A stretch of DNA of 64,000 bases from Ylistrum balloti (Eukaryota). The DNA is taken from NCBI RefSeq assembly GCF_031769215.1, contig NW_026782361.1:1178001-1242000 (forward strand), given 5' to 3'. Below, in pieces: positions 42,501 to 64,000 of this stretch. Position 1 is the first letter of the stretch, and every line of letters starts with the position of its first letter. The translations under genes and the position numbers were made by a program. The notes beneath the pieces were generated by a model. The model did not search any database. It saw only the letters and a list, made by a program, of their open reading frames with translations, and had not been told where the DNA came from.

Positions 42501-45500
42501 CCATCACCCACTCTTAATCGAGTATCCCCTACCATGGACCAAGGTATACAGGTTGGCTCACAGCCTGCTGCTATAGGCGCTATCAGGAGACCTGGTGGGT
42601 AGTCAAATATCAGTGCTATAACTCATTTACTTCTTTTGCTGCTTTTGGTTTCCCTTGCAAAGTAAGCAACTGTGCTGCAAAACCTTGCACGTTAAGAGCT
42701 CATCTTGGCCGTCAATCACAGAAATAGCCTGACATCCATATAACTCTATGCAAATTACTAGCTTTTTTCTATAACATTTAGCATTAAGAGGTGGTGGACT
42801 GTTTGCATTGCACTTTTGTATTAGTTATTTGCATCCATCTGAAAACTTAATTCATAAGAATGAATGGTTGCAAAAGACTGATGAATAACACGAGTGAATT
42901 GCATGTCTCTTGTTAATTCTACATTTTTGGGTTATTCCAGTAAACATCTACTTGACCCCGGGACTTCTTTCAATGGTTCAGTTTTTTGCCTATTATTTCT
43001 ACACATTATGAATTGAACAGGCTGTCAGCTGATTTCTATATTCCTATATTTTGGTTTTAAAACCTATATTTTGAAAGACCTATATTTTCCTTCTTTTTTT
43101 TTTAAATATATATCTTGTAAATATTTCTTTGATACTGCTTTTGGCTTCTTATTTTAGAGAATTCCCAAGTCTTTAATAGCATCACCAGCCACCAGAAAAT
43201 GATTCAGTGCATCTCTTTATCACCTGTATGGGCACCTTGCAAGGCAGTACAACAGGATATTGGCCTTTTAGGTGCTCATTCAGATGATGATGATGATGAT
43301 GATGAGCTATGCAGCAGCTCTCTGTCTGGATTGTGATGCTGTTGAAGTGAATGGTTACTTTCAGGTAGTTTTTAATCATTGATTAATATAGGAACAGTAA
43401 GTGAAGGTAAGAATTGTTAGTATAATGCCTTTTAATGAAACATTTTTTGTTTTTGCCTCAAAACTAGCAAAAAACAACTTCTATATTTGTTGAAAAAATA
43501 TTCTTATATTTTGAAGAAGACTTAGTTGACAGCCTGATTGAATTTTAAGGGTGACAGCCCTCAACAACAACTGAAGTCTTGTAGTTGAAGTGATTTCTTT
43601 ACTGGAACAACTCCTGCATACATTCAGTATACAATATTTGCCTTAAGTAGTTCCCCTCCCCTTATTTGTGCTTGCCTTGCTTCCTCTGGCAATATTGAAT
43701 TATTTTAGCATCCCTATTAGTTGTTACACAACTTTTTAATTAGTTCAATTCTTCAGTGCTTCTGGCAGGAAATAACACACATATCAATCTTTCCTTCTGC
43801 CACAGAAAGTGAGAATTCTCGCCTCACAAATTTATCAAAAGTGTTGCTGTTTCCAGAATACAAGCCAGTTATATTGCTACCAACAATTCCTCCACCTATA
43901 TACATATGAGCTGTACTCACTATTCAAAGTATACATAATTTTTTAAGGGGATGTTGCAAAGCTAATGTTAGCAAGCAATATTTTCATCTCAGTTGATAGT
44001 GTCGTATGAACTTAACATTAAAGGTCTCTCAAAAACAATTTTTTAAACGGAAAGAAAAATGAAGATGATGATAATTATAAATGAAACATTGTACAAAGAA
44101 AATACAATGTTGATTTAAAATAAGAATTGTGTTATTCAGCTTTACATTGTGTAGAGGCTGGGTACTGGGTATAGGGTGAGATGACTAAGTCACAAGAAGT
44201 GCTGTAATTTTATTAAGGATAGAGACATTTTCTCACTGTCTTTATCAGAACTGAACTTTTTGTTTGTTTTAAGTATGTTTTGCTATCCTAATGAGTGTTT
44301 CCTTTGTTGCCTATTCTTTAGGGGTTTTTTGGTGTTAAAAACAGGGTGAATATGGTAATAACTATTGTATAAGCAGTATGTTGTGCTGTGTGTGTATGAA
44401 AATAGAAGTGCTTTAGCTGCAAACTTTTTCTTTCTTTCTTGTTTGTCAATGTACATGTACACAATGTTGCATGAACATCTGAAGATTAATTTTCAGTCAG
44501 GGAACATAACTCTTTACTTTCCTTGCCCAAGTAAAACTTGAAAGTCTATAAAGGCGAAATATTGGCAATTGAAGTAGTAAGAAAGAAAAAAATTATTTAA
44601 GAGAATGAATGAGAAAAGACTATATCCCAAAATTAGTTGCCTCTAATGCATTGACTTTCAATGACTTTATTCATGAATCAGAGCAACTTTCAAACAAAAA
44701 GTTGAGGTAAAAATGCAGCTTATTGATATGTGCTTAATGGTCAATGATGTATTACTATAAAGATTAAAGTATTCTTAATGTTTTGCCTGACATTTTTTGG
44801 GGGGAATGATGATAATTAACTCATTTAAATTGATGATTTGTTTACCATTTTCTATTGCTTATTGTTATGTATCACATTTTGGTTTCAGCTGGTGAACAAA
44901 ATAACAGTTGAAAGTCATTTTTATGTTGCCTATATATGCTTCTATGCATTTCTTTAATTTGCTGTGATGTAACAATTCTGAAGTGTTTCTTTTCCAAACA
45001 TATTCATATCATTGCTAAGAAGATAGTCAAACTTTGTTACCTCAGACTTTTATAACTTAAAGACTCATATCATTCCAACCATTTCTTCGGTCACTGTCTA
45101 ACTTTACGCAAACATTTGAGATAACACAGTTCGGCTGCATATTTATATTGTCTCATAACTTGACAGTACATGTTATACTCTTGGAAGTGAACATTACTAG
45201 TATTGTAACAAAAAACACTGAATGATGTTTGACACTGTTTAGGACAACTTTGAATCTTGTTGAATTCGTCTATCCTAACTTTGGGTAACAAAAATGAAAT
45301 TTAATGGATTTTGATAATAGGCAAAAATGCTTTAAAAAATGTTTGAGTTTTATTAAACATGATCAGCTCAGTCTCTTACAAAATGAACTTGTGAAAGTAG
45401 AATGTAACCTGTGAAAATATGGAAAACTGAGGTCCAATTTTGAGAGTGAATAACTCCTTTGTTGGGCTTCAATCACCTCTCTTTTCTCCGATGTGATTTT

Positions 45501-48500
45501 TGACTGCAAAATTCTTCATTGATCCATATTTGAGGTGTACATGAAATACGAAATTGAAAGACTCCAAAAATAATTTCATCTAAGGAAAAATTGTTTGCTA
45601 CATTGCCAAAGAAAACTGTAACTATTACTTCAACTGGCCTTGGTCTCTTTTCAGGTTCTCGTGGTCCCACCCCTCCACTGCCAAATAGGAAATCTCCAAC
45701 ACTTGACCAAAGCACCCAACATCCAAGTTCTAGTCCAGATAAGTCAGAAAGACAACAGCAGCAATCACATCAGCAACAGCAAGGCTATAATCAGGGTTTA
45801 CAGGAACGACGAGAACAACGAAGGGGTGCACCAAATCAGAGACCTCCATCAGCATCTTACTCGCGTGGAAGGGGACAGAGTCGTGGTAAAAGTGTACCTG
45901 GGGGAGGAGCAGCAGCAGAAAGAGGTATATCACTAGTCCTTGTCCTAACATCACAATATACACTCAACATGTAAAATATGCATGGTGCTTCATCAATATT
46001 AGATATGAAAAGCTTCTATCTGATTGTTCACATTTTAGTTTCCACAATATTATTTGCTTATGTGAAATATATACCAGGACAAAGATTTGAAGTTCATTAA
46101 AGTCTTTGCTTTCTGTCAATTGCTCTGTCAGTACTTTCGTGACCATAACCAAAACATAAAAATATTTTTTGTGCTGGCATTGTGAGGTGTACTATTATTG
46201 CACCCATACTTCACTATACACATATAGTAATAGATATTTGGTCATCATGTATTCCTTTGCTTTGTGTATATTGTTTGGTTTTAAAGTACTTCTGTTCACA
46301 TTTATATAGAGTATCATCTACCATCACTTCAGATCTACCAGTTTTATTGTAGGAGGCTTCAGTGATAGAGGTGGGAGAGAAACAAGAGGAGTTGGTCCCA
46401 GGGGACCCAGAGGAGGCAGTAGACCACCAAGGGGTGGGGGCAGACCTCAGTCTGGACGCCCCACAGAATCTCCACTCAAATTTGAAGGAGAGTTCGATTT
46501 TGAAAGTTCGAATGCTCAATTTGACAAGGAGGAAATTGAGCGTGAACTTAAACAAAAGCTTACAATTTGTAAGTCTTAATATCATTATTTTACCACTATT
46601 TAAGGCCAGTCATGATCTTGCTAAACATGACATAAATGCTATGATTTGTAACTTGTGGTTAGTATTTGGTTATCTCTAAAATGAATATAAATTTCAATTA
46701 ATTTTTAAATAATGTGAAAACTATAAATATGCTAATTGTGAATTCTGCATTTCTTTTTTTCAAAACTGTCTTTTCTGCTATAAGATTAAAAAATTTTGAA
46801 TGTTCAGTTATATTCATTTGAGAACTGATTTTTGCCATTGAAGCGGATAAAGTTCCAACAACAAACGGTGAAAAAGAAGGAAGCATAGAGAATGGTGGTG
46901 ATAACTCAAGTACCAATAACCCCCCAGAAGAGGAAGAAGATGATTTGTTTTACGACAAAGCAAAATCTTTCTTTGACAATATTAGCTGTGAAGCAACAGA
47001 AAGAGCAAAAGGGTACTAGACAGTGTTTCTTAAACTATATTTAAACTGTGAAATTCATTTGAACAATCTAGTTTCGGTACATGGCTCCCAATAGGGATGT
47101 CATCTCCAACATCGGGGTTCCTTTCTCCTATACTCCCAAACAACATCCATAATATATTTGATGTATGTAATTGTGAATAACAGTGAACTTGTCTTATAGC
47201 ATGTTAGATCAGAGTGAAATTTTTGTTTTATTCGGTGTGGAGTGATTGTCTAGTTCATATTCCCCAATGAGTTTAAGGGGGGAAGTTGTTGATAGTATAT
47301 TAGTTGATGCCATTATCTACCCTTGATAGATTCACTATATCACTCCATAGTCTTTTTTGCTTTCCTTGTCCAAAAGACCTAATGCATCTTCTATTTTTCA
47401 AGTTTTCAAATAAATTTTAAATTAAGGAAATAATTCATAGAGCAAGGATAGTAATTTACATTAAATACGTACAATGAAAGGTAAAGACAGTGATAAATAG
47501 CTTTACTTCAAATTGCATTTATTTCTTTATTTATTGCATATTGTTCCAATCACCATATGTGTGTAGTTTGAAGAGTAAATTAAACACACAAATTGTTATT
47601 TACAGATCAACAAGAACTAGTTGGAGAGAAGAACGAAAACTTAATGTAGAAACATTTGGTGTTTCTGATTATCCTCGAAGGAATTTCCGGGGTGGTCGAG
47701 GATATGGTAACCGTGGATACCGAGGAGGCCGTGGTGGTTATTTCCGGGGCCCGACAAGAGGTGGTCCAAGAGGTATGTTATATATCAAATTTGCAACTTT
47801 GCAATTCTTTTAAAAGTCTGAAAGAATCACTTTACCAATGTCAGATGTGAAATCTCCTTTAACCATCTTAGTAGTCTAAATGACAAAACAGAACTATAAC
47901 AGTCATATAAACTGCCATAGTAGGTGGGGTGGAACTTGTTGTAGAGGCTTTTGGCCTAAAGAACAGCATTATACTGCATATCAAAAGAACTGAATGTTTT
48001 AAGTTCAGATAATAAGATGTTGCTCGTATAATGACATTTATTGTTCATGCTCTTTTGCACATAACGCTATCTGAGCTGTAGGCTGCCCTCACCGTTTTCC
48101 TCTCCAAAGTGTGATGTTGATAATTGAAATTGGGTTTGATATCTTGAACAGGAGGAGGACGATGGAATAATGGCCCACAAAGGGGAGGAGGGAGAAACAG
48201 GAGTCAGGGTTGGGTGGATTATAACTATGACTATGAGGCAGCTGGTATCAACAGGCCAAGAGATGGGTCAGCTAAACAGGTAAAGGTTGGGTATGATGTG
48301 ACACAAAGACATTTTGGTTTTTCTTCCATTTTAAATGTTAAATTTGATTTCCATCTCTATAAAAACATGTACATCTAATGAAGATGTTATTGACAGTTGC
48401 TAAGGTTAAACCAAAGCTATAATAGAACCTGCACTATGGTACTACAGTGTTTAATTATTTTCAACTTGTTTACTATGACTTAGGAATTTTTGGGGAATAT

Positions 48501-48642
48501 TTCTTGACCTATTGACGATTACATCATTACTGGTCTGCTATCTATCTAAAGAGTTTCTCTACATATATACGCTTCACTGGCAACTCTTGACTTGTAAGAG
48601 TGTTTTTGTTTGTTTGTCCAGAAAGTACCAGCTCAGGCATAG
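39579..48642 (+). CDS. LSM14: LSM14 / RAP55 / Trailer hitch / Scd6 family P-body protein, 10 exons, ~502 aa (515 aa with the distal exon-5 donor)
   Basis: Exons 39579-39699, 40663-40844, 41039-41207, 42490-42594, 45655-45885 (alternative donor 45924), 46353-46568, 46844-47012, 47606-47772, 48152-48279, 48622-48642. Lsm domain ([46 protein letters not shown]...[14 protein letters not shown]), DFDF-type box ([16 protein letters not shown]), FFD box ([14 protein letters not shown]), TFG box ([11 protein letters not shown]), RGG repeats. The A versus B paralog distinction is vertebrate-specific. Confidence 0.96.
43283..43305. repeat. (GAT)7 microsatellite, LSM14 intron 4
   Basis: GATGATGATGATGATGATGATGA. 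Confidence 0.9.
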
Positions 48643-51600
48643 ATTCTTGAAGTGATCAAGTGCAAGGAACACCAAACACGCAATCCTGCCACATAAGTGA
48701 GAGATGTCGGACAAGATGATGCCACATATTCATGCTGTCAGTCTTCGGATGTGGGCTTGTTCACATTGTAGTGCTTGTTGAAGAAAAGATAACATTGTTG
48801 GTCAACAATACAAATGGAGAGAAAAAGATACGAACAAATATTTCTGATAACTAGTCTGAAATGTAAAGGTACAATACAGGTGCTGAAGGTCCTGTTAGAT
48901 TCGTCCTGTTCTTATTTTGTTTGTCCATTTTGTGTTTTATTTATAATTTTGCCACCTGAATAAGTTTTTAGTAAGTGTGGCGAAGTTGCTGAAGTGATGC
49001 GTGTAACTAGGTGGACTAAACAATGTTGGTTCACAAGGAAACATCATACTTTACGAACCACATGGATATAGTTTCTGTGAAAAAGGCAGAGAAAGATATT
49101 TGTGATCAATTCCCACAGACACTTGACAGAAATCTGTGGTCAGGGTCTTGTCTGTCAGTGTATTTAAAATGTGTTCATCATATTTGGTTTGTACGTCATT
49201 GTGATATCATTATACATTTGTGACAACTTCACCCCAGAATATGGGACATTTGATTTCTACAACTGAAAGGTGATGTTATGGAAATGTCCTTGTATTCTGT
49301 AGAACGAGGTGGGAATCTGTCGAATAATGCGTGTACATGTAAAAAGTCGACATTGACTTGTCCTCTACACAGATCAAGTTGAACTTGATTGACAGTTACA
49401 GATTGTTTGCACCTTTTTTTCTGTCTGTAAACTAGGATTCAGAAACTTAATTACTGGTGATGTAGTTTTTATTTAAGAACAATTTTGCTGACTTAAGCTT
49501 TAACTCACCTACAAAAGTGACAACATTGACTTCAATGACTACTTTCTTGTTACAACTGAATTTTTTACTTGAAAAAAAAACAAATCAAGATAAAGGTGTT
49601 TCAAGAATTTTACTTGAGAGTTTGAGTCCTTGTATTCTCTGGAAGTAGATTGTCTTTTTAATTCCAACTATAAAGCACTTATTCAAAATTTTACAGTAAC
49701 TAAAATCTCCGGGTTTTTCTTTTCTTTTCTTTTTATGTTGACATTAAATTTACTAGATTGAAACCATTTTGAAAATCAGTGCTCAAAAAATGTCATCTAT
49801 CAATAGCAGAATTTCCAGTTTTCCTGCCCAATATCTTATAATGTAAAATAGTGCAACCTTGTTAGTCCCCACTATTTTAAGCCATTGATGTCTTGTCATA
49901 TTACATATATATATAATTTAAAACGGTGTGTTGGTAATCTCAATAACACACATTATATGCAAGATCTATATAAACCTGAAATTAAAGCTGCTCAGTTAAT
50001 TGAATTGTTTTTAATCCAGAAGTAAAGTAACAAGGCTACTTACTTACTTCCAAACAAAAGAAAATCTTAAGTTTTAAAATTTCCTTAATCTTCAAAATCT
50101 GCTTATTCTATTAGATGATTTCAGCAGACTGATGTTTCTAACTTGACAAAAATGTTAACCATGACAGATTATAACTAGAAAAATAATTTTGTACTTTAGG
50201 ATTTTTTACACCAAGAATCATTTGATGGATCAATCGCTTTTTTGTGTAATTATCTTTGTGTCATTTGTCAGACTTGAATAAATCACAATTTAAATTTCAC
50301 AAATAACGGACTTGCATATTATAAGAGTGCTGGTGTGTTGAGAAATATGCCCATTGAGGACAGCAGCCAGGACTGCTGATATGTGGCTGTTATTATGCAA
50401 TATTAGGTTCTTACCACAAAAGGGACATCAGAAATCAATGGTAATAAAATGATGCAATGAGAGACAGCGTAGTGTTTTTTTTTTTTTATTTATTTTTTTC
50501 AGATTGTTGACGACATTATCAGTTATAGGAAAAAAAGAGCCTGGTACTATCTAGTACTACCAGGTAACAAGTCAGGTCTGATAGTATTCGTGGAGTAAAA
50601 TAAACACAATTTGCTTTGAAAATGAAGATTTATGAGTGTGATGAGGGAATGTTGTTTACTTCACCAGTTCTATTAATTTTATGAAAACCTACTTCTGCCT
50701 CTCAAATGAGCATAATGGGTAGAAGTAAAAAGGAAAAATTTATAACTGCATAATAAATGTAAATACTTGCATTAAAATATAATTTTAAGAGACAGAAATT
50801 TCAGTCACTGGCCAAGCATTCCCATAATTGTGTCCAGAAGGGCAGTAATAATGCTAACATGTCTTATTTGTATAGCAAGTATATCTAACAACCCACATCG
50901 TTTCAGGAGTGCCATTAGATCCAGATTTCCCAATCATCACAAACCAGACTCACTTTTATACTTAGTAGCTATTGACATGTGATACTGTCTGATTAGTGTT
51001 TGTTAACAACTTGCATGTGCATGGTTTTAAACTCCCTGGTGGGATTAAACTTGGTCTAACATTGTCTTTGATGTGTAAATTGGCAGGATTGTTTATGAGG
51101 CTAGTTGGCTAGTCAAAGTTCATTTGGCGGACTATAGTTTTAAGATTCAAACAGAACATGTGAAATTATGAACATTTTCCCTGGTTCCACAAATCCACAT
51201 CTGGAATAACCAAATTACGCCAACACCTTGAATTCTGCTTTACAGCATATCCCATATCCGTCAATGTTCTTTAATCTCAAGTCAAGTTGATATTCACCCT
51301 AAAGCAAAAAGGAAAACATATTAACGACTTGATCAATTAATTAATAAAATGGGTGAAATTATGACTACCTTTATTTGACAAGAAGAAATTTCTAATTTTC
51401 ATACATGTATTTTGACCATGGATTTGTCATTTGTTTTGTTTTGTTTGTTTTTTTTCCAACGTCAATATTGTTTGCTTTAGAAGTCTGACATGAGATATAA
51501 ACCAGTATATGAGTTGACCTTGAAAAGTGATGCAAGTTTAATTCGGAATATTTGCTTCTGGTTGGTAATGTCAATAGTTCTTAAAACACAACCAATAGAA

Positions 51601-51809
51601 CATTTAAATGTGAGGTTTGGATGACTACACTGTTGGCTTTATCACACAAATGACCAGTGTGAAGCGTACTACCACTGATGCAAGTATTGTGCAAGATGGC
51701 ATGGAATCGGCCAAGTTTTCAACTGTACTACAAACCTATGGACACTATATTTAAAGATAAAATGATGAGACAATAAATAGATTATAGAATGAATGTAAGC
51801 ACTCGCAGG

Positions 51810-51912
51810 TCTTGCTTTGGGAGGAAACTGGAGAATCCAGGGAAAACCCTGGAGATAAGGGAGGCAACCCATTACCTTTGCACGTCTGTTTCAGGAATCG
51901 AAACCCTGGGTA
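51810..51912 (-). mobile_element. SINE fragment (tRNA-derived head plus V-domain-like motif)
   Basis: The minus strand reads GGGTTTCGATTCCTG (B-box-like), then CCAGGGTTTTCCCTGGATTCTCCAGTTTCCTCCC, similar to the GGGTTT.CTCCGGGT.CTCCGGTTTCCTCCC central motif of V-type SINEs as I recall it. Confidence 0.5.
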
Positions 51913-52532
51913 TCTAAATGAAGATCTTGTGATAACATGAAAGTTATAAGATAAAGTGCCCTGTAATATCTTCTGTCGGCCACAAAAAGGTCTACTGAAT
52001 CTCTTTTTAACACAATTTCTTGTGATAAATCCTGAAATTTTTTACACGTACTTTCCCAGATCATTTCTGTGGCAAGCCGACCAGTGTTTATTCAATGTTG
52101 GTCCATATTTTATCTCGTTTAGATATATTGGATATTTCTCACATAAGATATCTTGTATAATTTGGTGAAACGTTGGATTAACATTACACACAGAATAAAT
52201 GTTATGTTATATAAGATTAGTTACCATATTTTCCGGATTATAAGCCACGGCTCCGTGGTCAATTATATGTTACATCTCAATTAAATTTGAGAAGATATTT
52301 CACTTATCATACAAGATATTTTAAGTAATGCAAAGGTTCGTCTTATATAAGACATCTTGTATAGGAACAAGATTTTAAAATGTCAAGATTTCTTGAGCAT
52401 TGTCACAAGGACAAACCATTATGATTTTATCGCACAATAAGACTAGACTCTTGTTCTACAGGACCAATAGTATGTTCTGAAGAACCATTACCATTGATTG
52501 GGAATAGTGTCGCCTCTCATTACTTTTTTTTT

Positions 52533-55500
52533 CTATCCTTTGCATACTCTGAAGCGCCCTAAATGGTTCTCGGACTGACTATAATATAAGATATCTCGAG
52601 AAGATATTTGATATCTATGTTCAAGATATCTAGTGTAATACATATGATACCTTATATAAGCACACAATAAATAACTATGGCATATATTTTGAAGTTGAAG
52701 CATAGACCATGTTATATTTGTGAACTTGGGGTAGAAATATAAACAACATATTAAACTAAGATTATACACCAGTAAACCATTTCCTACATACCGGATATGC
52801 ATTCAATGACAGCAAGTCAGTTAATGTATATGTCACTGTAACTGGTGCTGAAACAAAAAGGTGGGTTACATTGTAATTCATTGTGGAAAAAGCACAATTA
52901 TTCTACTATCGTAATAAAAACGAGCAACTAAGAAATGCACAAAGGAAAAACATTTAGTATAGATGCTGATGTAGAATGTTGCACTGTTGGCGGAGATCGG
53001 ACGCTGATTTAAGAAGGATTTACTGTTGGCGGAGATCGGACGCTGATTTAGGAACGATAAACTTGCTGTTAGTGGAGTTTGGACGATTATTAAGGAAAAG
53101 TATACTTACTGTTGACTGCTTTAGGATGAGGACACTTACTGTTGACTGCTTTAGGATGAGGACACTTACTGTTGACTGCTTTAGGATGAGGACACTTACT
53201 GTTGACTGCTTTAGGATGAGGACACTTACTGTTGACTGAGTTTGAACGCTGCTTTAGGATGAGGACACTTAATGTTGACTGCTTTAGGATGAGGACACTT
53301 ACTGTTGACTGCTTTAGGATGAGGACACTTACTGTTGACTGCTTTAGGATGAGGACACTTACTGTTGACTGCTTTAGGATGAGGACACTTACTGTTGACT
53401 GCTTTAGGATGAGGACACTTACTGTTGACTGAGTTTGAACGCTGCGTTAGGATGAGGACACTTACTGTTGACTGCTTTAGGATGAGGACACTTACTGTTG
53501 ACTGCTTTAGGATGAGGACACTTACTGTTGACTGAGTTTGAACGCTGTTTTAGGATGAGGAGATAATGATTTAGGATGAGTACACTTACTGTTGACTGAG
53601 TTTGAACGCTGTTTTAGGATGAGGAGATAATGATTTAGGATGAGAACACTTACTGTTGACTGCTTTAGGATGAGGACACTTACTGTTGAACGCTGCTTTA
53701 GGATGAGGAGATAACTGCTTTAGGATGAGGACACTTACTGTTGACTGAGTTTGAACGCTGCTTTAGGATGAGGACACTTACTGTTGACTGCTTTAGGATG
53801 AGGACACTTACTGTTGACTGAGTTTGAACGCTGCTTTAGGATGAGGACACTTACTGTTGACTGCTTTAGGATGAGGACACTTACTGTTGACTGCTTTAGG
53901 ATGAGGACACTTACTGTTGACTGAGTTTGAACGCTGCTTTAGGATGAGGACACTTACTGTTGACTGCTTTAGGATGAGTACACTTACTGTTGACCGAGTT
54001 TGGACGCTGCTTTAGGATGAGGAGATAATGATTTAGGATGAGTACACTTACTGTTGACTGCTTTAGGATGAGGACACTTACTGTTGACTGAGTTTGAACG
54101 CTGTTTTAGGATGAGGAGATAATGATTTAGGATGAGAACACTTACTGTTGACTGCTTTAGGATGAGGACACTTACTGTTGACTGAGTTTGAACGCTGTTT
54201 TAGGATGAGGAGATAATGATTTAGGATGAGTACACTTACTGTTGACTGAGTTTGAACGCTGCTTTAGGATGAGGAGATAATGCTTTAGGATGAGGACACT
54301 TACTGTTGACTGCTTTAGGATGAGGACACTTACTGTTGACCTTTAGGATGAGGAGATAATGATTTAGGATGAGGACACTTACTGTTGACTGAGTTTGAAC
54401 GCTGCTTTAGGATGAGGAGATAATGATTTAGGATGAGTACACTTACTGTTGACCGAGTTTGAACGCTGCTTTAGGATGAGGAGATAATGATTTAGGATGA
54501 GGACACTTACTGTTGACTGAGTTTGAACGCTGCTTTAGGATGAGGAGATAATGATTTAGGATGAGGACACTTACTGTTGACTGCTTTAGGATGAGGACAC
54601 TTACTGTTGACTGAGTTTGAACGCTGCTTTAGGATGAGGACACTTAATGTTGACTGAGTTTGAACGCTGCTTTAGGATGAGGAGATAATGATTTAGGATG
54701 AGGACACTTACTGTTGACTGAGTTTGAACGCTGCTTTAGGATGAGGAGATAATGATTTAGGATGAGGACACTTACTGTTGACTGCTTTAGGATGAGGACA
54801 CTTACTGTTGACTGAGTTTGAACGCTGCTTTAGGATGAGGAGATAATGATTTAGGATGAGTACACTTACTGTTGACCGAGTTTGAACGCTGCTTTAGGAT
54901 GAGGAGATAATGATTTAGGATGAGTACACTTACTGTTGACCGAGTTTGAACGCTGCTTTAGGATGAGGAGATAATGATTTAGGATGAGGACACTTACTGT
55001 TGACTGCTTTAGGATGAGTACACTTACTGTTGACCGAGTTTGGACGCTGCTTTAGGACGAGTATACTTACTGCGGACCTAGTTTGGACGCTGCTTTAGGA
55101 CGAGTATACTTACTGCGGACCTAGTTTGGGCGCTGCTTTAGGATGAGTATACTTACTGCGGACCTAGTTTGGGCGCTGCTTTAGGATGAGTACACTTACT
55201 GTGGACCTAGTTTGGACGCTGACTAAGTAGAATTAATTTACTAATGGTGGAGATTAGACGCTGAATTGGGACGGATACATTGATTGTTGGATGGAGTTAC
55301 GAAGCAGATTTGAGAAACATTAATTTACTATTGATGGAATTTGGATGCTGGTTGAAGAAGGTTTAATTTACTGTGGCGGAGATTGAACGCTGCTTTAAGA
55401 AGGATATACTTAATGTTGGCGGAATTCAGACGCTGATTTAGGAAGGATGCACTTACTGTTTTTGAGAACTGGACAATCAGTAAAGTGTGGCAGATACATT

Positions 55501-57961
55501 TGCACTGAGTTGAGCATTTCACAGGTGAAATCCAAGCGGTCCTGAAAAATTGGCTGATCCTCAACCTTAATTGTTACTAGTATAGTTCCTTCATCTATGT
55601 CAAAAGCTGCGACCCCAAAGAAAAGGAAAACATATTATGATCTAGATATAAAAGATTGTGGTATAGACTATTAAGAATATCTGACGTATGCGTTTTACAG
55701 TTTACCTTATAACGATTTTATGAGCGTAAGAGTAACGCCCCTTTTTGTGAATGATAAACAATATGAACAAAAGAAAGATTTACACGGCGACTCAAGAGAA
55801 AGTGCAATCAAAATAAGACCAGATGTTCTGGAAGAGTAAGCATTTTCTATTTCATCGACGACAAGCGCCATATAAACATATGTAAATACAAGTAAGAAAT
55901 GTCACGTTCTCCAATGAAAACAAGGTATACAACAACGGAACCAAAAGGCAAACTAAGTTGGAAGAAATCAGTTTAATTTTGTGACAAAAAATAGATAGTT
56001 TATTTACATAACCCGTTCATAAATAGTCGTTTGGTCAGAAAAAACACGGACATATACAAGATATTTACGAATTATAGACCAACACTTAAAGGTAATATCT
56101 TAATTGCGAAGACCATCATAAAATAAAATGTGAATCCACTTTATCAACACGACACATTTTATCTCAAAATCTGGGCTTCAATATAAAGATGTGTGGAAAG
56201 GGAATACTTACGCATATTGAATGAAGTTCCGAGTCGGATTTCTCTCCTGGGGTCTAGTGGACCACCCGGGCTCCAGTAGATGTGTGGACACACATGAGAG
56301 AATTCATACTCAATATCCTCTTGCTCTGGATAGTACAAAAGACACACAAGTAACAAACACATACTAACGTAATTTTACACAATACTTCTGTTCCGTCCTT
56401 CAACGACAATAGGGACTTACGGGGCGCCGTTGTAGTATGTATCGACGAAATGTGACACCATTAATTCAAATTATCTGTGAATAATAAATATCTTATTCAA
56501 TTATTACTGGGATCACTGAATGTCCAGAACTATTAACAGCAGTATTTCGAATTACTGATACCACTAATTAAAATTAAAGAAATCGCTCAGTGTCAAGACA
56601 GATATCATTAATTCAAATAATCGTCATCAGTAATAAGGAGTGTTCAATGATATCAATAATTTGAATTAGCGATATAAAGACTAAATCATTTAATTATTTA
56701 TTGATTTGAATAAATGATATCACTAAACGAATAAGTGATATCAATGATTCGGTTTAATGATATCAATAAATAATTGATATTAAATTTTGAGGATAAATAC
56801 TAAAATGGCGCCATATAATGACTAAATTGATGTACTTAACATATGTGAAAGGACAAACAAAATAGACACATCTGTCAATCATTGCATGTAAAATCTCCAC
56901 TCGGAGGAGGAAAGGGAAGTTCGTTTGTCAATACCGTTAGAATCACTAGCATACCTTCGGTATTCTAAAAGTTCTCAGAAGATACGGAACATTTTCTTCG
57001 TGCTGGTAGTATGAATCGAATAGATGTTCTATCATAATCAGGTAAAAATATGTGCTGTTTCGGTGACATACGCTGTCACCGTCAAACTAAACATTAAACG
57101 ATACAATGATTAAGTCACATGAGTTCATGTGTATCATAATCTTACACACACTAAAGTAGAAAGTAGGGATGGTGTACTTAATATCATACTACGGACGAAA
57201 AGTCTTGTAGGATAAATAGTGTGACGATATAGTGATGGTGTACCTGGCATCATACTACAGCCGAAAAGTCTTGTAGGGTAAATGGTGTGACGATATAGTG
57301 ATGGTGTACCTGACATCATACTACAGCCGAAAAGTCTTGTAGGGTAAATAGTGTGACGATATAGTGATGGTGTACCTGACATCATAATACAGCCGAAAAG
57401 TCTTGTAGGGTAAATGGTGTGACGATATAGTGATGGTGTACCTGACATCATACTACAGCCGAAAAGTCTTGTAGGGTAAATAGTGTGACGATATAGTGAT
57501 GGTGTACCTGACATCATAATACAGCCGAAAAGTCTTGTAGGGTAAATGGTGTGACGATATAGTGATGGTGTACCTGACATCATAATACAGCCGAAAAGTC
57601 TTGTAGGGTAAATGGTGTGACGATATAGTGGTGGTGTACCTGACATCATACTACAGCGAAAAGTCTTGTAGGGTAAATAGTGTGACGATATAGTGATGGT
57701 GTACCTGACATCATACTACAGACAGTAACTAGGGCTTGATGTTTACACCTTTGTCAATGATACAGATCACTTCTATTGATACGGCAATGTTCACTTTGAT
57801 ACAAAAACTGCATTAGACTTACCACACGGCTCTAGCGTCCCACTATCTGCCTCGTCATGTGCCCGACCCTCGGGCAATTTTTTTAAGAGGTCCTCTGGGA
57901 GGCAGTAGACAACAGTTATGACCACAGCCAGGCATACAAGTTTGTATATAGTAACCATCAT
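52533..57961 (-). CDS. Secreted ML-domain (MD-2-related lipid recognition; NPC2/MD-2-like) protein, 6 exons, 192 aa
   Basis: Exons (minus): 57961-57823, 56325-56212, 55606-55457, 52847-52792, 52724-52651, 52578-52533; all GT-AG, phases 1,1,1,0,2, 579 nt open. Signal peptide MMVTIYKLVCLAVVITVVYC (in-frame upstream ATG at 57997). Mature part: EPCEQEDIEYEFSHVCPHIYWSPGGPLDPRREIRLGTSFNMPFDIDEGTILVTIKVEDQPIFQDRLDFTCEMLNSVQMYLPHFTDCPVLKNTPVTVTYTLTDLLSLNAYPFTNITWSMLQLQNICHSYLLCAYISQSENHLGRFRVCKG. It shows an ML-like cysteine layout (N-terminal C, xC...CP pair, LxC near the C-terminus) and alternating hydrophobic strands. Family assignment is by eye; no HMM was run. Confidence 0.8.
52983..55460. repeat. 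Complex ~2.5-kb minisatellite (ancestral ~43-bp unit; 30-bp and modular derivatives) filling ML-gene intron 3
   Basis: The core combines modules GCTTTAGGATGAGGACACTTACTGTTGACT (30 bp), GAGTTTGAACGCT and GAGATAATGATTTAGGAT. Diverged 39-44-bp units lie at both edges; the first unit overlaps the exon-3 donor. Confidence 0.97.
56418..56815. mobile_element. ~400-bp MITE-like element with 29-bp imperfect TIRs, ML-gene intron 1
   Basis: Left GGCGCCGTTGTAGTATGTATCGACGAAAT versus the reverse complement of the right end, GGCGCCATTTTAGTATTTATCCTCAAAAT (23/29). AT-rich interior with repeated TGATATCA. Confidence 0.7.
57160..57722. repeat. 66-bp minisatellite, ~8.5 copies, ML-gene intron 1
   Basis: Unit TACCTGACATCATACTACAGCCGAAAAGTCTTGTAGGGTAAATAGTGTGACGATATAGTGATGGTG. 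Confidence 0.97.
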
Positions 57962-60449
57962 TCTGCATGTACTGGTGGCTTGCCTCGCTTTGAACATTTG
58001 TCATGTACGATTTGTCGACGTTTGAAAACCTTTAGAATATAAAAACTGTTGCTACAAAAATTAGTTATCTGACGGTGACTGTGGGGTACACTAATATATG
58101 TATCCGATGTCTCTTCTTACCCAAAGTCAAATTCCAGTAATTAAGATTCCTTACCAGAGACAACATTAATATGACAACTGCCATCTTACATGAACTTACT
58201 GTCAACAGATTCTCATTTACAATTGTTAATCTGTAACGAAAATTAAAGAAAGTAAGGAATTCTGACATCTTCCCAACAGAAAAACCTTTACTGGAGCACA
58301 AACAGGGGTGTATAACTTACAGGAGGTTACATCTCTCCATGTATAACAGAACTGCCAATGCAGGAAAGGGCAGCATTTCAAAGTTAAACGATACAATCGG
58401 TCATGGACTCAAAACAAGCAATTAGAGAAAAAGACAAGAAGAAGAAATGAAAAATGTTAACCATTGGTCCTGGCAAAAGCTGTACAGATTTATTTAACAC
58501 TGACCAACACCCGAAAAAAAACCGTAGCATTTATATACCGGGCAATTAAAGGTATTGGCCAACCTTCTTAGAGAATAAGTACTTACTGAAAAACGGACGG
58601 TAATATTACCAATATTCATGAATACCGTACTCCGTATATGAATACAGATATTCACGGATCACAAAGTTTCACGGAATTCGTGGTCCCTATCTACAGCAAC
58701 AGATATACATTTTCACAAATGTGACTTATTAAACACCAACGTTTGCGCAGCTGTATAAAGAGGTGTTTTGAAAGCACATCTTAGGGAGAAAAAGTGGTTA
58801 AAGTTTTAAGATAATGAAAACATTTTTTTTCAGAAATATTTCCTTCCCATACACTACAATACCAGAACTTCCATGACTTGCCGAATTTCAACACACTTTA
58901 TGTTATAGGAACACGACTCTTGAAATAAGGAAATTTGGGAAATCTTATAAAACAATTAAAGGCTTCGTATCATAAATAATCCCACCATTCGAAGCATCAC
59001 GGCGAAGTGTATAGCTCGGTGGCTTTGAAAAAACACTAAATAAACCTGTTATTGTGGGCACTATCTGGATCAGTATTAGTATTTCTGCTACTCAGAAAAA
59101 AACTTACTGGTTTAGCTATTCATTTGTTTGATATAAAAGAGTATATAATATTGTTAAGAGCACTTACTTTCAGAGTATGATTCTAAGAGTTGTTCATTTG
59201 TTTACTATGTTAAATGTCTTACTTTATATAAATATATGCTGATAGCTGGTAAGGTCGGCATTTAGGAGTTATCTCCCTTCGTCTCTTAGAGAAAAAATAT
59301 TTATACATTCGAGTGGAGATAATTTGTTTTAATAACATGTGAATCAAAATCTTTGTTACTAAGTTTGTTCCTAATTGTCACATTGTCGATCTTGTTTGTT
59401 ATCTATTACAAAGTGAGTCCAGTGTGAAGGCCTTACCTCTATTCTTATTTTATTGTTATCACATTCTGTAATTTTCAGAGCAAAAATACACGAAACATAA
59501 CCAAGATTCAGTCTAGTATCGTTTATTCAAAATATGAGCAAAGTTGCTAGAAATAATGGTGTTGGGTATGGTCTTTGTAGTGTAGACCAGTAGTCTCATA
59601 CCATGTTTATCAAATAAAAGAGAATCGACAAAAAATGTGTAACAAAAGAGGGTTTATATATATTGTTACAAAATGTAATTTCGATATTAGTGTATATCAG
59701 ATACATAAGTCAGTAATCTTTGACTGTCTGGTTGTAGGATTATTTTGGTCAATATGTACCATCTGGCAGACTGAGTGTAATTATGAAAGTACAGTGGACA
59801 GCACTGACATCTAATTCTCCCGGTTAACAAGTATTTGGCAGTTTAATGGCAGTCTAATAAACTAAAGTCCATCCTGATAAGAAACTCAACCAATGGGACA
59901 TTAGATCGTGGCATTTCCATGACGAGATCTTATAGAATAGGGATAAAAGGAGGGGAGTTTTTGGGGTGGGGGACAGAGCCCTATGAACAGACAGAGATAG
60001 AGAACTCACTAGCCCAATGGACACCATGATGAACTGTACGAGGAGTGGGTGTTTTAGTGTATACCTTAGAAGAACTGTTTTTAAACAGGGACAGTTCTGA
60101 TACGAGACACAACGTGAAGTACTAGTATGAGTATATGAACTCTGTTCGTTGATGAGATGTTGCTTTTGTACATGTAACATTATTATTATTCAACATGTAA
60201 TAAACATCACTATTGCCAACAAGTACGTGAGTTTACGCCTACTGTATTATATTGGTGACCGTGACCAAGGATTTCTTCTTAACATAATAACACTTCACAT
60301 TACTCTTCATTAAACAATTAAATTAATTTTAAAGATTGAAGAAACAAATTTATCTGGAAATTTCTGATACATGTGTTCATGTATGTAAGGTGTTTAGCGA
60401 ATCAATTGATATAAGCAGGGACGTATAATGCGTCCCTGATATAGGTGAT

Positions 60450-61085
60450 AACACTTACTGTTTACTGATGAAGATCGATCATTCCTGAAAGCGCCTTAAC
60501 GTGATCATAAAGCCAAAGTAACATGGCGGACTGAATGCCTCCAAACCAGGAAGAACATTGGTATTTGTATTTCAAGTTCCCTTGTAAAATTTAAAAAGCT
60601 TTGCGTGTTGTTATAAAAAGGCTCAAGATGGATCGAAAAGAAAAGAAAAAGTATGTTCTGCTTTTCTAATCTATTATCCCAGTCAAACTTAACAAAACTG
60701 ATGATAGTCTTTCAGTTTTTCTGTCAGTTTATTTTCAGACCAATTTACAAAATAAAAATAGTTTTGTCCTCGTCAAGCAGACTATGCTGTGATGCATTCA
60801 TGCAGTAAGGTAGGTGATTACTAACACAAGGAATCTTAAGCCACTTCCTCATTCTGTGAATCAAACTTTTTATTACTTCAGTACTGAATATATTGAAACG
60901 TTTATCATTCTTTCATAATGAAGCATTTTCTGAGTATTAAAATTGTTAATGTCATGGACGTATAATACATATGTATTATACGTCCCTGGTAATGTTTAGG
61001 CTCCAAAACGAAAGTAGATTGTAACCGGAAGTATCCCCAACAAAACCATATCCGGTTGTTATTGGCGGGTCGTTTAACAGAAAAG
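60450..61085. promoter_or_regulatory. GINS3 promoter region, possibly with an upstream non-coding exon
   Basis: YY1-like AACATGGCGG at ~60520-60529; plus-strand donor TG|GTATTT at 60560/60561; acceptor TTTAACAG at 61080; ETS motif ACCGGAAGT at ~61024-61032. A minus-strand donor ACA|GTAAGT at 60459/60458 points the other way. Confidence 0.5.
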
Positions 61086-63223
61086 ATGTCTGAAGGCATT
61101 GAGAATTATTTCAGTATTGACGACATTCTCTCTAGCCAGGAGCGTTTGCCATGCACCGTGGAAATGACCATCTATCGACTGGGTGAGGATCAGTAGAGTA
61201 TGACAGAATTGTCTTGTTTAACTTGTTTAACGGCAGACTTCTTCATGCCCAACTTGATCAGTTGATGTCCCCGGTTTTCCCGTTTCTTTTTTTCCTCCAG
61301 AACTCGCACAACATGACAAACCGTTGCGTGGATTTTTAATGTAACATTTCAGACTTAAATCGCATCGAACCTGACTATTATTTATGACAACCAATTACTT
61401 TGCCAATGCTTAACAGAAAGCGAAATAAAAGCATTATTGCAGGCCTAGCTAAGTTCTTGCGTATCACCCAGATTTAACCTGGGGTTCCTCGGTCTTATCC
61501 TTATTGTTACACCAGATGTAAACCATTTTGACGGATATTTTAACCTTTCATCAATAACTGAAATTATAAAAGACAAAAATCACATTTCTAGGACTTGTAA
61601 CCAACTAAAACTACAACAACTGCATTCATGCTTTTTGGATCAGTATTTGTTTAAGAATGAGAGGCTTGAATTCTGTATATCTGAATGCCTATGTAATAAT
61701 GATAAAAATAATTCTGTATTTGCAGAGGTTAACATAAGTACAAGTATACTAATATTCCACACTGCCCTCCTAAATATTTAATCATAAACAAATACTAACA
61801 ATCAATTGGGTACATTATCAACCGAATTGATATACGCATGTAATTTAAAATAAAGAATTACCCCTAAATCAAGTAAATCAAAGTCAGCAACAATAAATAT
61901 AATAATGAAATAATTAAAAGATTTAAGATCAGGGTTTGCTCTCAGTATTTTCTTAATAGGTCCTTCGGTAAAATTTAAATGGAGTTCCTTACCTGGTGTC
62001 CTTTTAATCTTTTATTCTTCAATTGTCTTTTGGGATGGTTTGAAAGCAAACTCAGATTTATGTGAACAAATTTAATTTTTTCATATTTTCTTTAATTAGG
62101 GTACATGGATTCAAGTTCTGAAAGTGAAGATCTACTACCAGGTACAAAGATTGAGATGCCATTTTGGATGGCACGAGCATTGTGTAGTCGCAAACGCCAC
62201 ATTGTAAGTGTCGAGATCCCCAAACAGTACAAGGAAAGTTATCGTGAGATCTTGACAGCAGATGCTACTGTTGTGGACCTTCACAAACTAGGCCCATTTT
62301 ACTATAACTATGGATGTCAGCTTCTTCGGTTTGAACTACCCGACAGTGGAGACATTTCAAAGTGTCTGCTCAAGGTTGGTGTACTTTTTCACACTCTTTT
62401 GCAGTGTTTTAGCTAACTAGCAGACAACATTGAACAATTCAACGCCATGCTTTCATTTTCAATGCCCAACTTTGTGTTTCTTACTATCGTTCTACATGTC
62501 CTGATTTTTCTTTTTAACCATTCTCATTTTTTTGTTGACTAGTAAAAATTTGCTGGTGGTCGTCAAATTTAATTTTAATACAGTGGCAAACAGCTATTAG
62601 TGGTTTAGGTAAGATTTCAAGTCCCACAGCACAGGAGAGCAAGGTGAACACATATCCAAAATATAAAGTTCCAGTGACCAGTAGTGTAGGAGAAAGAGCC
62701 CAGACAAAATTTTTCTTTGATGTTGGTAAAAATGTATGTTAGAGTGATCAACTTCTGATATATGACACACAAGCTTACCTGGGATAAACCATTCCTCAAG
62801 TATGAAATTTCAATAATGAGTGGTGTAGGAGAGCTCAGACAAGATAACTGAAGGACGGACAGAAAGACAAAAACATAAGGACAGATAGACACAATGCAGA
62901 ACTATAGTTCCCCCAGTCCCTTCAGGGGGACTGATAAGGACACCTGTTTATAATGTCAGACTGTGCATGATATTTTTGTTTATTTTCAGACTTTTCAGAC
63001 CCGTTTACGAAAAATAATGGATTCTTCACAGAATGCTTTGAATGAAGACACCACAAGACTTACAGAGAAGTTAGACGAGTCTGAGAGACTGCTGTTTAAG
63101 GCAGGACAGCAAGGCCTTAATGACTTTTTTAAGTGGGAAACAAGACAGATAGAGAAACTGACCACATCAGAAATGGTCAGACATCACCGCAAACGGAAAC
63201 GTGCTGCATTAGACGATGCCTGA
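61086..63223 (+). CDS. GINS3: DNA replication complex GINS subunit PSF3, 3 exons, 201 aa
   Basis: Exons 61086-61182, 62100-62374, 62990-63223 (606 nt). Motifs ENYFSIDDILSSQERLPC, LLPGTKIEMPFWMARAL, REILTADATVVDLHKLGPFYYNYG, TFQTRLRKIMDSSQN, KLDESERLLFKAGQQGLNDF..WE, basic C-terminal RHHRKRKR. Confidence 0.96.
62850..62937 (+). mobile_element. 3' end remnant of a HINE-like element, GINS3 intron 2
   Basis: GGACGGACAGA microsatellite remnant followed by ACTATAGTTCCCCC...GGGGGACTGATAA terminal hairpin. Confidence 0.45.
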
Positions 63224-64000
63224 TTAATGTTATAGATGTCTGTTAAATCTCTCCATTCTATCAGAAAGGAAGTCTCAGCTCTTTTAAAATTAATATTAAA
63301 GAAAGTCATTGTAACTGTAAATACTGTTATTCTGCAGATTGTGATTACTTAAGTGCGAAAGTTACAGTAGCTGTAAATTCTGACTTTCTTTCTCAGGAAA
63401 ATTGACAATTTTCATCCTCTTTATCACAAGAATTAATGGTAATTGTGAATGTTGTTGACATCATTTTCAAGGAGTGTGACAAATACTGTAAATCATCTGT
63501 ATTTCTACTGTATTTTAAAACCTGTGGGTATTGCCTTTATTTATTTGTATGAGTACTGTTTAACAATGAATATACGTCTGTGTAGGACTTAGTTTCCTTT
63601 TTGCTTTGTTACACTAGTAGCTATGAAATATACAACTTATTTTGTTTTTGCCACAAAGGTTACAACTTAAAACAAACAGACATGTTTTATTTGCTGTCTT
63701 CATTGTGTATTTCAAATGATAAATGAACTGAGTTGCTCTTGTGACAAACTTAACGAAATTCAAATATTTGTAATAATGTCATATTTTGATTTAATAATTA
63801 TTATATGTATTATTTATCTTTATCAATTTAAATTCTGTAAATCTGGAGCAAATTTGAGTACTTTTATTTAAAGATTGGCATCAAACATTTAAGAATTCTC
63901 CCCCTTACAGAATCTGAAAAGGATGTATTTACAAGTTCAGATCAAAGTTAATCTGGTCAAATTCATGGACAAATGAAATAGGCTAAATTTGGTAGTTTCA

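What the first reader, a model, noticed from the sequence alone, without database searches (positions are those of the whole stretch)
52533..57961. Hidden secreted ML-domain (MD-2/NPC2-like) gene buried among repeats
The ORF track shows only disconnected fragments, and exons 3 and 4 are absent from it in the correct frame. Six exons nonetheless splice into a 192-aa protein with a signal peptide and an ML-like fold pattern. It is divergent: only one Cys where NPC2 has a pair, an extra Cys before the LLC motif, and a C-terminal ...FRVCKG tail, which leaves an odd cysteine count (7) in the mature chain and so possibly a free thiol or dimer. ML proteins bind sterols or LPS (NPC2, MD-2), so this is a candidate lipid carrier or pattern-recognition co-receptor that automated annotation could easily miss.
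Basis: partly seen in the sequence, partly recalled or inferred. Interest (0 to 1): 0.7.

Follow-up and report, generated by a model that had tools for sequence, protein, structure and literature searches.

The report
Secreted ML-like lipid-binding gene, remodelled

Summary
A real minus-strand gene is present. Its last two (52724-52651 and 52578-52533) are false. The true last exon is 51298-51215, outside the reported span.

The corrected model has five exons, 543 nt and 180 aa. All splice sites are canonical. It has a signal peptide and six cysteines in the mature chain, including a conserved CC pair. The 192-aa length, the FRVCKG tail, the "one Cys where a pair is expected" and the odd cysteine count are modelling artefacts.

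Evidence for the corrected model:
- A family profile hits all five exons and neither false exon.
- The Mizuhopecten orthologue has the same five exons and the same neighbours, GINS3 and LSM14.
- dN/dS against scallop is 0.19.

The ML (NPC2/MD-2) assignment is supported but weak by sequence. Pfam PF02221 is below its cut-off in all four orthologues. Foldseek's best matches are NPC2, MD-1, GM2 activator and RhoGDI. ESM Atlas neighbours are ML clusters.

No RNA run exists for this species, so the junctions rest on homology. Orthologues are already annotated in three scallops. The scan had not found this gene on other DNA.

Verdict: new member of a known kind, low to moderate interest.

The parts
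57823..57961 (-). Exon 1. Starts at ATG 57961, with a second Met at 57958 and an in-frame upstream ATG at 57997. Encodes a signal peptide, an acidic linker, and the first conserved Cys (EPC). Donor G|GTAAGT, phase 1.
   Evidence: tblastn with Mizuhopecten P0007 aligns the signal peptide and the ...PC end. Family profile E 0.009. Mean Kyte-Doolittle hydropathy of residues 8-19 is 2.95.
57164..57721 (.). Tandem array of 66 bp x 8.5 copies inside intron 1. It gives a spurious 171-aa ORF and is not an exon.
   Evidence: TRF. ORF list. No family-profile hit.
56212..56325 (-). Exon 2, phase 1 to 1. Contains the EYEFSHVCPHIYWSPG...DPR.EI core and the second conserved Cys.
   Evidence: tblastn 67-76% identity to scallop orthologues. 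Profile E 1.9e-16. The exon borders are the same in Mizuhopecten.
55457..55606 (-). Exon 3, phase 1 to 1. Runs FDIDEG...DRLDFTC...DCPVLKN and holds the third and fourth Cys. Donor A|GTAAGT. Read-through of the donor would stop at 55412-55410.
   Evidence: (E 2.5e-18). Homology to the orthologues ends exactly at the donor (query residues 1-50/51).
52983..55460 (.). A 2.5-kb minisatellite with units of 30, 43 and 64 bp. It begins at the exon-3 donor and fills intron 3. It carries 48 GTAAGT copies on the gene's strand.
Evidence: TRF. Count.
52792..52847 (-). Exon 4. Phase 1 in, phase 0 out. Encodes (T)PVTVTYTLTDLLSLNAYP. Acceptor tttcag|CA, donor CCG|GTATGT.
   Evidence: (E 2e-4). The junction codon gives NT, as in the orthologues. 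The second haplotype has one conservative change, Y to F.
52651..52724 (-). Rejected as intronic sequence, not coding.
   Evidence: No hit to the family profile or the scallop locus. Two in-frame stops in haplotype X1.
52533..52578 (-). Rejected as intronic sequence.
   Evidence: No homology. It is made redundant by the true exon 5.
51215..51298 (-). True exon 5, the last exon. Encodes GEYQLDLRLKNIDGYGICCKAEFKVLA plus TAA. Acceptor ttgctttag|GG, phase 0. Holds the conserved CC pair.
   Evidence: Family profile E 9.3e-10. Sequence context. 67% identical to Mizuhopecten exon 5. tblastx collinear hit. No difference in haplotype X1.
61080..63227 (+). Neighbouring gene GINS3 (PSF3), divergent from the ML-like gene. 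Context only.
   Evidence: Pfam PSF3_N. 87-93% translated identity to the GINS3 side of the Mizuhopecten locus.
45615..50473 (+). Neighbouring gene LSM14, its 3' exons and UTR, convergent with the ML-like gene. Context only.
   Evidence: Collinear tblastx hits at up to 100% identity to the LSM14 side of the Mizuhopecten locus.

Best explanation
The locus is an intact, single-copy, five-exon gene on the minus strand: 57961-57823, 56325-56212, 55606-55457, 52847-52792 and 51298-51215. It encodes a 180-aa precursor. The precursor has an N-terminal signal peptide, a short acidic linker, and one beta-sandwich domain of about 135 aa of the ML type (NPC2, MD-2/MD-1, Der p 2, GM2 activator), held by six cysteines. 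It is the orthologue of the scallop genes LOC110449914 (Mizuhopecten), LOC117337365 (Pecten) and XP_069113018.1 (Argopecten), and sits in the same GINS3 / X / LSM14 neighbourhood. By analogy with the ML fold, the most likely mechanism is that the secreted protein holds a hydrophobic ligand (a sterol, phospholipid or microbial glycolipid) in the cavity between its two sheets, and either carries it or presents it to a partner. Shown here: exon structure, orthology, purifying selection, and an ML-like fold in an orthologue. Inferred only: secretion, disulfide pairing, lipid binding, ligand identity, and expression in this species.
For: Gene model. A profile of three orthologues hits all five exons in order and on the same strand. 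All borders are canonical and the phases match, giving 543 nt with no internal stop. Mizuhopecten has the same five exons with the same borders.
Orthology. The window is collinear with the Mizuhopecten locus, including GINS3 and LSM14.
Copy number. There is no paralogue in the window's own 648-Mb genome.
Selection. Summed over exons, pN is 0.30 against pS 0.70, and dN/dS is 0.19. A second haplotype leaves exon 5 unchanged and exon 4 with one Y-to-F change, while the nearby false exon gains stops.
Expression of the family. Argopecten members (P0001, P0005, P0006) and P0003 come from about 1-1.4-kb Logan contigs. For P0003 an uninterrupted ORF was confirmed on two such contigs. This points to spliced transcripts.
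ML assignment. PF02221 is the best Pfam family for all four orthologues and the only one for three of them; P0007 also gives a weaker DUF1091 hit. E-values run from 4.4e-4 to 0.026. On the AF2 model of P0007 (pLDDT 61.8, pTM 0.62), Foldseek ranks yeast, bovine and human NPC2, MD-1, GM2 activator and RhoGDI first, with E from 1.6e-4 and TM by target up to 0.62. VIA gives Z 8.1 to human NPC2 over 116 of 133 residues. In ESM Atlas, 27 of 30 feature neighbours carry PF02221 (score 0.95) and the best structural neighbour is a mollusc ML cluster with TM 0.61/0.64. hhalign against the ML exons of this genome aligns the CP...YP block in register (E 0.009).
Against: No RNA run of this species was available, so none of the four junctions is seen in transcripts here. 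Pfam finds no family in any single exon of the window, and the orthologues stay below the PF02221 gathering score (best listed 18.7 against 22.7 bits). A PDB sequence-profile search finds nothing. The structure model is of middling confidence and is of an orthologue that is 54% identical, not of the window's own protein. Generic Ig-like domains reach the same VIA Z of 7-8. hhalign probability is only 4.4%. The cysteine framework differs from canonical ML proteins.
Confidence: 0.8

Rival explanations
1. The reader's six-exon, 192-aa model is the true product. It ends in ...LLCAYISQSENHLGRFRVCKG and has an odd number of cysteines.
For: It is an open reading frame with AG/GT borders. LQNI...LLC loosely resembles the family's LKNIDG..CC block.
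Against: Neither terminal exon matches the family profile or the scallop locus, whereas 51298-51215 matches at E 9.3e-10 and 67% identity. The exon-4 donor is phase 0 and joins the 51298 acceptor to give AYP|GEY, exactly as in the orthologues.
Confidence: 0.03
2. The protein is a generic Ig-like (E-set) beta-sandwich that is not a true ML-family member and may not bind lipid. The ML signals would then be fold-level resemblance only.
For: PF02221 is below its cut-off in every member. VIA scores for GH2 Ig-like domains, Wzt carbohydrate-binding domains and transglutaminase barrels equal those for NPC2. hhalign probability is 4.4%. The canonical C2-C3 hairpin disulfide is absent.
Against: ML is the best Pfam family for all four orthologues, and the matches fall in the same C-terminal part of the model (profile positions about 46-129). 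ML proteins align over their whole chain, whereas other hits are single domains of larger enzymes. Foldseek and ESM Atlas both rank ML proteins first. The Cys-x(n)-Cys-Pro ... Tyr-Pro motif is shared with this genome's canonical ML exons.
Confidence: 0.12
3. The gene is a recently silenced or unexpressed relic in this species, despite its intact frame.
For: No RNA evidence here. No protein of this species for this gene is in the public collections searched. Intron 3 is swollen by 48 extra donor-like sites and intron 4 holds a very high-copy repeat.
Against: All five exons are open, with canonical sites. There is no disabling change in the second haplotype over exons 4-5. dN/dS is 0.19, although that averages over a long history.
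Confidence: 0.05

Closest known systems
Scallop orthologues: Mizuhopecten yessoensis LOC110449914 (XP_021352753.1, 181 aa; UniProt fragment A0A210QQ32, named an MD-2-related lipid-recognition domain-containing protein), Argopecten irradians XP_069113018.1 (182 aa), and Pecten maximus LOC117337365 (192 aa)
   Same: The five-exon structure and exon borders are the same, checked in Mizuhopecten. The neighbours GINS3 and LSM14 are the same. All six mature cysteines and the EYEFSHVCP, DRLDFTC, TD.L.LKAYPG and KNIDG..CC blocks are shared. Overall identity to Mizuhopecten is 54%.
   Different: Intron sizes and the repeat arrays inside them differ. Here the 2.5-kb array is in intron 3, whereas in Mizuhopecten a 2.3-kb 42-bp array is in intron 2. 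The linker after the signal peptide is not conserved. None of these proteins has been studied, and no paper cites them.
NPC2 (Niemann-Pick C2 sterol carrier; PDB 1nep, 5kwy_C, 6r4n)
   Same: It is a secreted single-domain protein of similar size. It is the best structural match, aligned over the whole chain (Foldseek E 1.6e-4 to 7e-4, TM by target 0.61-0.62; VIA Z 7.8-8.1 over 116 residues). The spacing from the N-terminal Cys to the Cys-x-Cys-Pro pair is about 66-67 residues. It has six cysteines.
   Different: Sequence identity is only 11-17%. The family lacks the local C23-C28-type hairpin pair and instead has one Cys in exon 2 plus a vicinal CC near the C-terminus. The loop between the third and fourth Cys is 15 residues with a predicted helix, against 5 in NPC2. 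Sterol binding is untested.
MD-2 / MD-1 (LY96 / LY86, TLR4 and RP105 co-receptors; PDB 3m7o, 3rg1, 3mtx)
   Same: The fold class is the same (Foldseek E 6e-4 to 2e-3; VIA Z 7.1-7.6 over 118-121 residues). An LY86 cluster is among the closest ESM Atlas neighbours (0.94).
   Different: There is no evidence of a TLR partner, of LPS binding, or of the MD-2 cysteine pattern.
Canonical ML-domain genes of the same genome (seven PF02221 loci on contigs C101, C117, C539 and C627)
   Same: The Cys...Cys-Pro-(I/V)...Tyr-Pro block is shared and aligns in register.
   Different: Those genes pass the Pfam cut-off exon by exon (24-47 bits). This gene does not appear in that search at all, so it is a separate, much more diverged lineage.

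Membership tests
ML domain (Pfam PF02221 E1_DerP2_DerF2 / MD-2-related lipid-recognition) | Sequence match to the family profile above the curated gathering score (22.7 bits) | tested here: not met
   Window exons give no hit and the locus is absent from the six-frame PF02221 search of the genome. All four orthologues hit below the cut-off: 18.7, 17.6 and 15.3 bits are listed, and the best E is 4.4e-4.
ML domain (Pfam PF02221 E1_DerP2_DerF2 / MD-2-related lipid-recognition) | Two-sheet Ig-like beta-sandwich of ML topology spanning the whole mature chain | tested here: met
   Tested on an AF2 model of orthologue P0007 (pLDDT 61.8, pTM 0.62), not on the window's own joined protein. Foldseek's top hits are NPC2, MD-1, GM2A and RhoGDI. 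VIA gives Z 8.1 with 116 of 133 residues of NPC2 aligned, but unrelated Ig-like domains score the same. The ESM Atlas structural best hit is a mollusc ML cluster at TM 0.61/0.64.
ML domain (Pfam PF02221 E1_DerP2_DerF2 / MD-2-related lipid-recognition) | N-terminal signal peptide and a single-domain secreted protein of about 130-160 mature residues | tested here: met
   Exon 1 has Lys7, a 12-residue hydrophobic core (mean KD 2.95) and V-Y-C before LPED. It aligns with the Mizuhopecten signal peptide. No SignalP run was available, so the cleavage site is inferred. The mature length is about 160 aa.
ML domain (Pfam PF02221 E1_DerP2_DerF2 / MD-2-related lipid-recognition) | Conserved cysteine framework: N-terminal Cys paired with a C-terminal Cys, a local hairpin pair, and a Cys-x(5-10)-Cys-Pro pair | tested here: inconclusive
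   Six mature Cys are invariant in the family. The N-terminal Cys, a C-terminal Cys and the Cys...Cys-Pro pair are present, the last with 15-residue spacing. The local hairpin pair is replaced by one Cys in exon 2 plus the second Cys of a vicinal CC. Pairing could not be read because no model coordinates were available.
ML domain (Pfam PF02221 E1_DerP2_DerF2 / MD-2-related lipid-recognition) | Hydrophobic inter-sheet cavity that binds a lipid | not testable with these tools
   This needs a binding assay or a liganded structure.
Scallop LOC110449914 orthologue group | Same exon structure, conserved motifs and conserved gene neighbourhood | tested here: met

The most novel reading that the evidence does not exclude
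This could be a bivalve-restricted, fast-evolving ML lineage. It evolves far faster than its neighbours GINS3 and LSM14. It has a rewired disulfide framework (a vicinal CC replaces the hairpin pair) and a helix inserted at the Cys...Cys-Pro loop. Such a protein might bind a ligand class not covered by NPC2 or MD-2, or serve as the missing MD-2-like partner of a bivalve Toll-like receptor. Its intron-3 minisatellite of 48 donor-site copies could additionally tune how much productive mRNA is made.
Probability: 0.15. Interest if true: 0.6.

Novelty: new member of a known kind. Interest (0 to 1): 0.27.

Why it matters
The result gives a corrected, homology-backed model for a gene that exon-by-exon domain scans do not see. 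It removes a false lead: an unpaired cysteine suggesting a dimer. It also shows that a small, unstudied ML-like lineage is kept at one syntenic spot in scallop-type bivalves. ML proteins are lipid carriers and, in vertebrates and arthropods, co-receptors for microbial lipids, so the family is a reasonable candidate for lipid transport or immune recognition in bivalves. Nothing here singles it out functionally. The case also shows how decoy splice sites and in-frame intronic ORFs near repeats can mislead manual exon chaining.

Tried and rejected
Searches that led nowhere:
- Pfam on single exon pieces gave no family for any real exon.
- A word-based protein search with the exon-3 piece found nothing, because of the length window and the divergence.
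- A three-exon model (E1, E2, then E3 read through to the stop at 55410) is open and gives 149 aa. I rejected it because homology stops exactly at the E3 donor and continues in exons 4 and 5. The old Mizuhopecten model OWF50860.1 makes the same mistake.
- I enumerated extra phase-1 exons between E1 and E2. Only repeat-derived frames and AT-rich chance frames turned up, and none matched the family profile.
- A weak hit at 56763-56713 (ISLNRIIDITYSFSDII, E 2.2) was rejected. It is in the wrong order and is AT-rich intron.
- A PDB sequence-profile search found nothing meaningful.
- A search for RNA runs returned only one DNA-like contig set, X1. I used it for polymorphism over 51000-52980 only.
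- A literature search for the orthologue identifiers found no paper.

Joined model: the 180-aa joined protein has no reference, so it was not sent to any search or fold tool. Only its length, stops, cysteine positions and N-glycosylation sequons were computed from coordinates in a script (the same summary for the three-exon trial). All family and fold tests used single exons or the orthologues.


Full report
WHAT IS THERE

The reported span lies on the minus strand of a repeat-rich stretch. It is six exons: 57961-57823, 56325-56212, 55606-55457, 52847-52792, 52724-52651 and 52578-52533. Together they give 579 nt and 192 aa, with Cys at 10, 20, 46, 59, 113, 129, 168, 174 and 190. So the observation as described is in the sequence.

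TESTING THE EXONS

Pfam finds no family in any real exon piece. A six-frame search of the whole 648-Mb genome with PF02221 finds seven ML loci elsewhere, but not this one. The gene has no paralogue in its own genome, and a word-based protein search found nothing.

The exhaustive phmmer search with the exon-3 piece gave three relatives of 139-171 aa at 41-52% identity. In each, the match ended exactly at the exon-3 GTAAGT donor, and two of them had about 44 more residues after it. These relatives are:
- Mizuhopecten yessoensis LOC110449914 (XP_021352753.1, 181 aa). Its truncated older model OWF50860.1 is UniProt A0A210QQ32, which UniProt names an MD-2-related lipid-recognition domain-containing protein.
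- Argopecten irradians XP_069113018.1.
- A transcript-derived protein of unknown species, P0003.
- Pecten maximus LOC117337365, added by a profile search.

A profile of three orthologues was run against every open fragment of window 40000-60000. Its hits were:
- exon 3, E 2.5e-18
- exon 2, E 1.9e-16
- a new fragment at 51298-51218, E 9.3e-10
- exon 4, E 2e-4
- exon 1, E 0.009
- nothing in 52533-52724

The new fragment reads GEYQLDLRLKNIDGYGICCKAEFKVLA followed by TAA. It is preceded by ttgctttag. It joins the phase-0 donor of exon 4 to give ...NAYP|GEY..., just as scallop has ...KAYP|GEY.

The corrected model is five exons, 543 nt and 180 aa. It has no internal stop and four canonical introns of 1497, 605, 2609 and 1493 nt.

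INDEPENDENT SUPPORT

Mizuhopecten has the same five exons, with borders at the same residues. Its gene lies between GINS3 (divergent) and LSM14 (convergent). The window has the same order and orientation.

One DNA-type contig set of the same species, X1, differs from the window at about 1% of positions. Over 51000-52980:
- True exon 5 is unchanged.
- Exon 4 has one Tyr-to-Phe change.

Nei-Gojobori counts summed exon by exon against Mizuhopecten give pN 0.30, pS 0.70 and dN/dS 0.19. Synonymous sites are saturated, but the direction is clear.

The Argopecten members and P0003 come from about 1-1.4-kb Logan contigs. For P0003, an uninterrupted ORF was confirmed on two such contigs. This points to spliced transcripts of the family in other species.

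With the true exon 5, the mature chain has six cysteines: 46, 59, 113, 129, 171 and 172. All six are invariant across the four orthologues, including the vicinal CC. The single Cys where a pair is expected, the extra Cys, the FRVCKG tail and the odd count all come from reading intron 4 as exons.

IS IT AN ML PROTEIN?

By the curated sequence test, it is not. PF02221 is the best Pfam family for all four orthologues, and the only one for three of them, but it stays below the 22.7-bit cut-off. Listed scores are 18.7, 17.6 and 15.3 bits, and E-values run from 4.4e-4 to 0.026. A PDB sequence-profile search is empty.

The fold evidence is more favourable:
- An AlphaFold2 model of P0007 has seven main strands and one helix between the third and fourth Cys. 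The shallow alignment included the window's exons as separate rows. pLDDT is 61.8 and pTM 0.62.
- Foldseek against the PDB ranks NPC2 (yeast, bovine, human), MD-1, GM2 activator and RhoGDI first, with E from 1.6e-4 and TM by target up to 0.62.
- VIA-align gives Z 8.1 to human NPC2 over 116 of 133 residues, and 7.4-7.8 to bovine and ant NPC2, Der f 2, Der p 2 and mouse MD-1. Ig-like domains of unrelated enzymes score the same, so Z alone does not discriminate.
- ESM Atlas places P0007 next to mollusc ML clusters by features (0.95; 27 of 30 neighbours carry PF02221) and by structure (TM 0.61/0.64).
- hhalign against the ML exons of this same genome aligns the Cys-Pro ... Tyr-Pro block in register, but weakly (E 0.009, probability 4.4%).

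Taken together, the protein works like an ML-fold protein and is probably a very diverged member of that superfamily. It fails the formal Pfam threshold, and its cysteine framework is rewired.

MECHANISM

The protein is most likely secreted. This rests on the exon-1 hydrophobic core (mean KD 2.95) and its alignment with the scallop signal peptide. It would carry a hydrophobic ligand in the inter-sheet cavity. Ligand, partner and any immune role are inferred, not shown.

LIMITS

No RNA run of this species was available, so the junctions rest on homology, phase and conservation. The joined 180-aa protein has no reference and was not submitted to any search or fold tool. Only its length, stops, cysteine positions and sequons were computed from coordinates. 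Earlier notes of this scan call the genome a scallop. I tested this only through the collinearity with Mizuhopecten.

VERDICT

This is a real gene. It is correctly recognised as ML-like, but wrongly terminated. Orthologues are already predicted in three scallops and one is already labelled ML by UniProt, and no paper mentions them. It is a new member of a known kind, of modest interest.

Noticed in passing
window 52983-55460 (minus strand), intron 3: The 2.5-kb minisatellite starts at the last four bases of exon 3. Its units repeat the donor context (AACAGTAAGTG), giving 48 GTAAGT copies on the gene's strand, 43 of them with the full 11-mer. Use of any decoy donor would include the TAA at 55412-55410.
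   Followed up: partly
L016 12024-12138 and 12407-14733 (Mizuhopecten orthologue): The scallop orthologue has its own unrelated arrays. A 57-bp x 2 duplication spans the exon-2 acceptor and the first bases of exon 2. A 2.3-kb 42-bp minisatellite lies in intron 2. Repeat growth at or near splice sites seems recurrent at this locus, but independent in each lineage.
   Followed up: no
window 57134-57649 (minus strand), intron 1: The 66-bp x 8.5 tandem array is open in one frame (171-aa ORF, GTPSLYRHTIYPTRLFGC units). Each unit carries AG and GT in the phase that would fit between exons 1 and 2. It has no homology to the family and is most likely a repeat artefact.
   Followed up: partly
window 51536-51736, intron 4: Contig depth in run X1 jumps from about 11 to about 10,700 here, and again to about 440 in the 51804-51870 bin. 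This indicates a very high-copy interspersed repeat inserted in intron 4, and helps explain why this intron is 1493 nt against about 295 nt in Mizuhopecten.
   Followed up: no
window 48144-50473 versus L016 19120-22186: Sequence downstream of the LSM14 coding exons, presumably its 3' UTR, gives tblastx hits to scallop in all frames. This means nucleotide-level conservation of non-coding sequence, far above that of the ML-like gene next to it.
   Followed up: no
window 57997: An in-frame ATG lies 12 codons upstream of the modelled start (MFKARQATSTCR-MMVT...). The orthologue alignment favours the 57961/57958 start, but the Pecten maximus protein also has a longer N-terminus.
   Followed up: no
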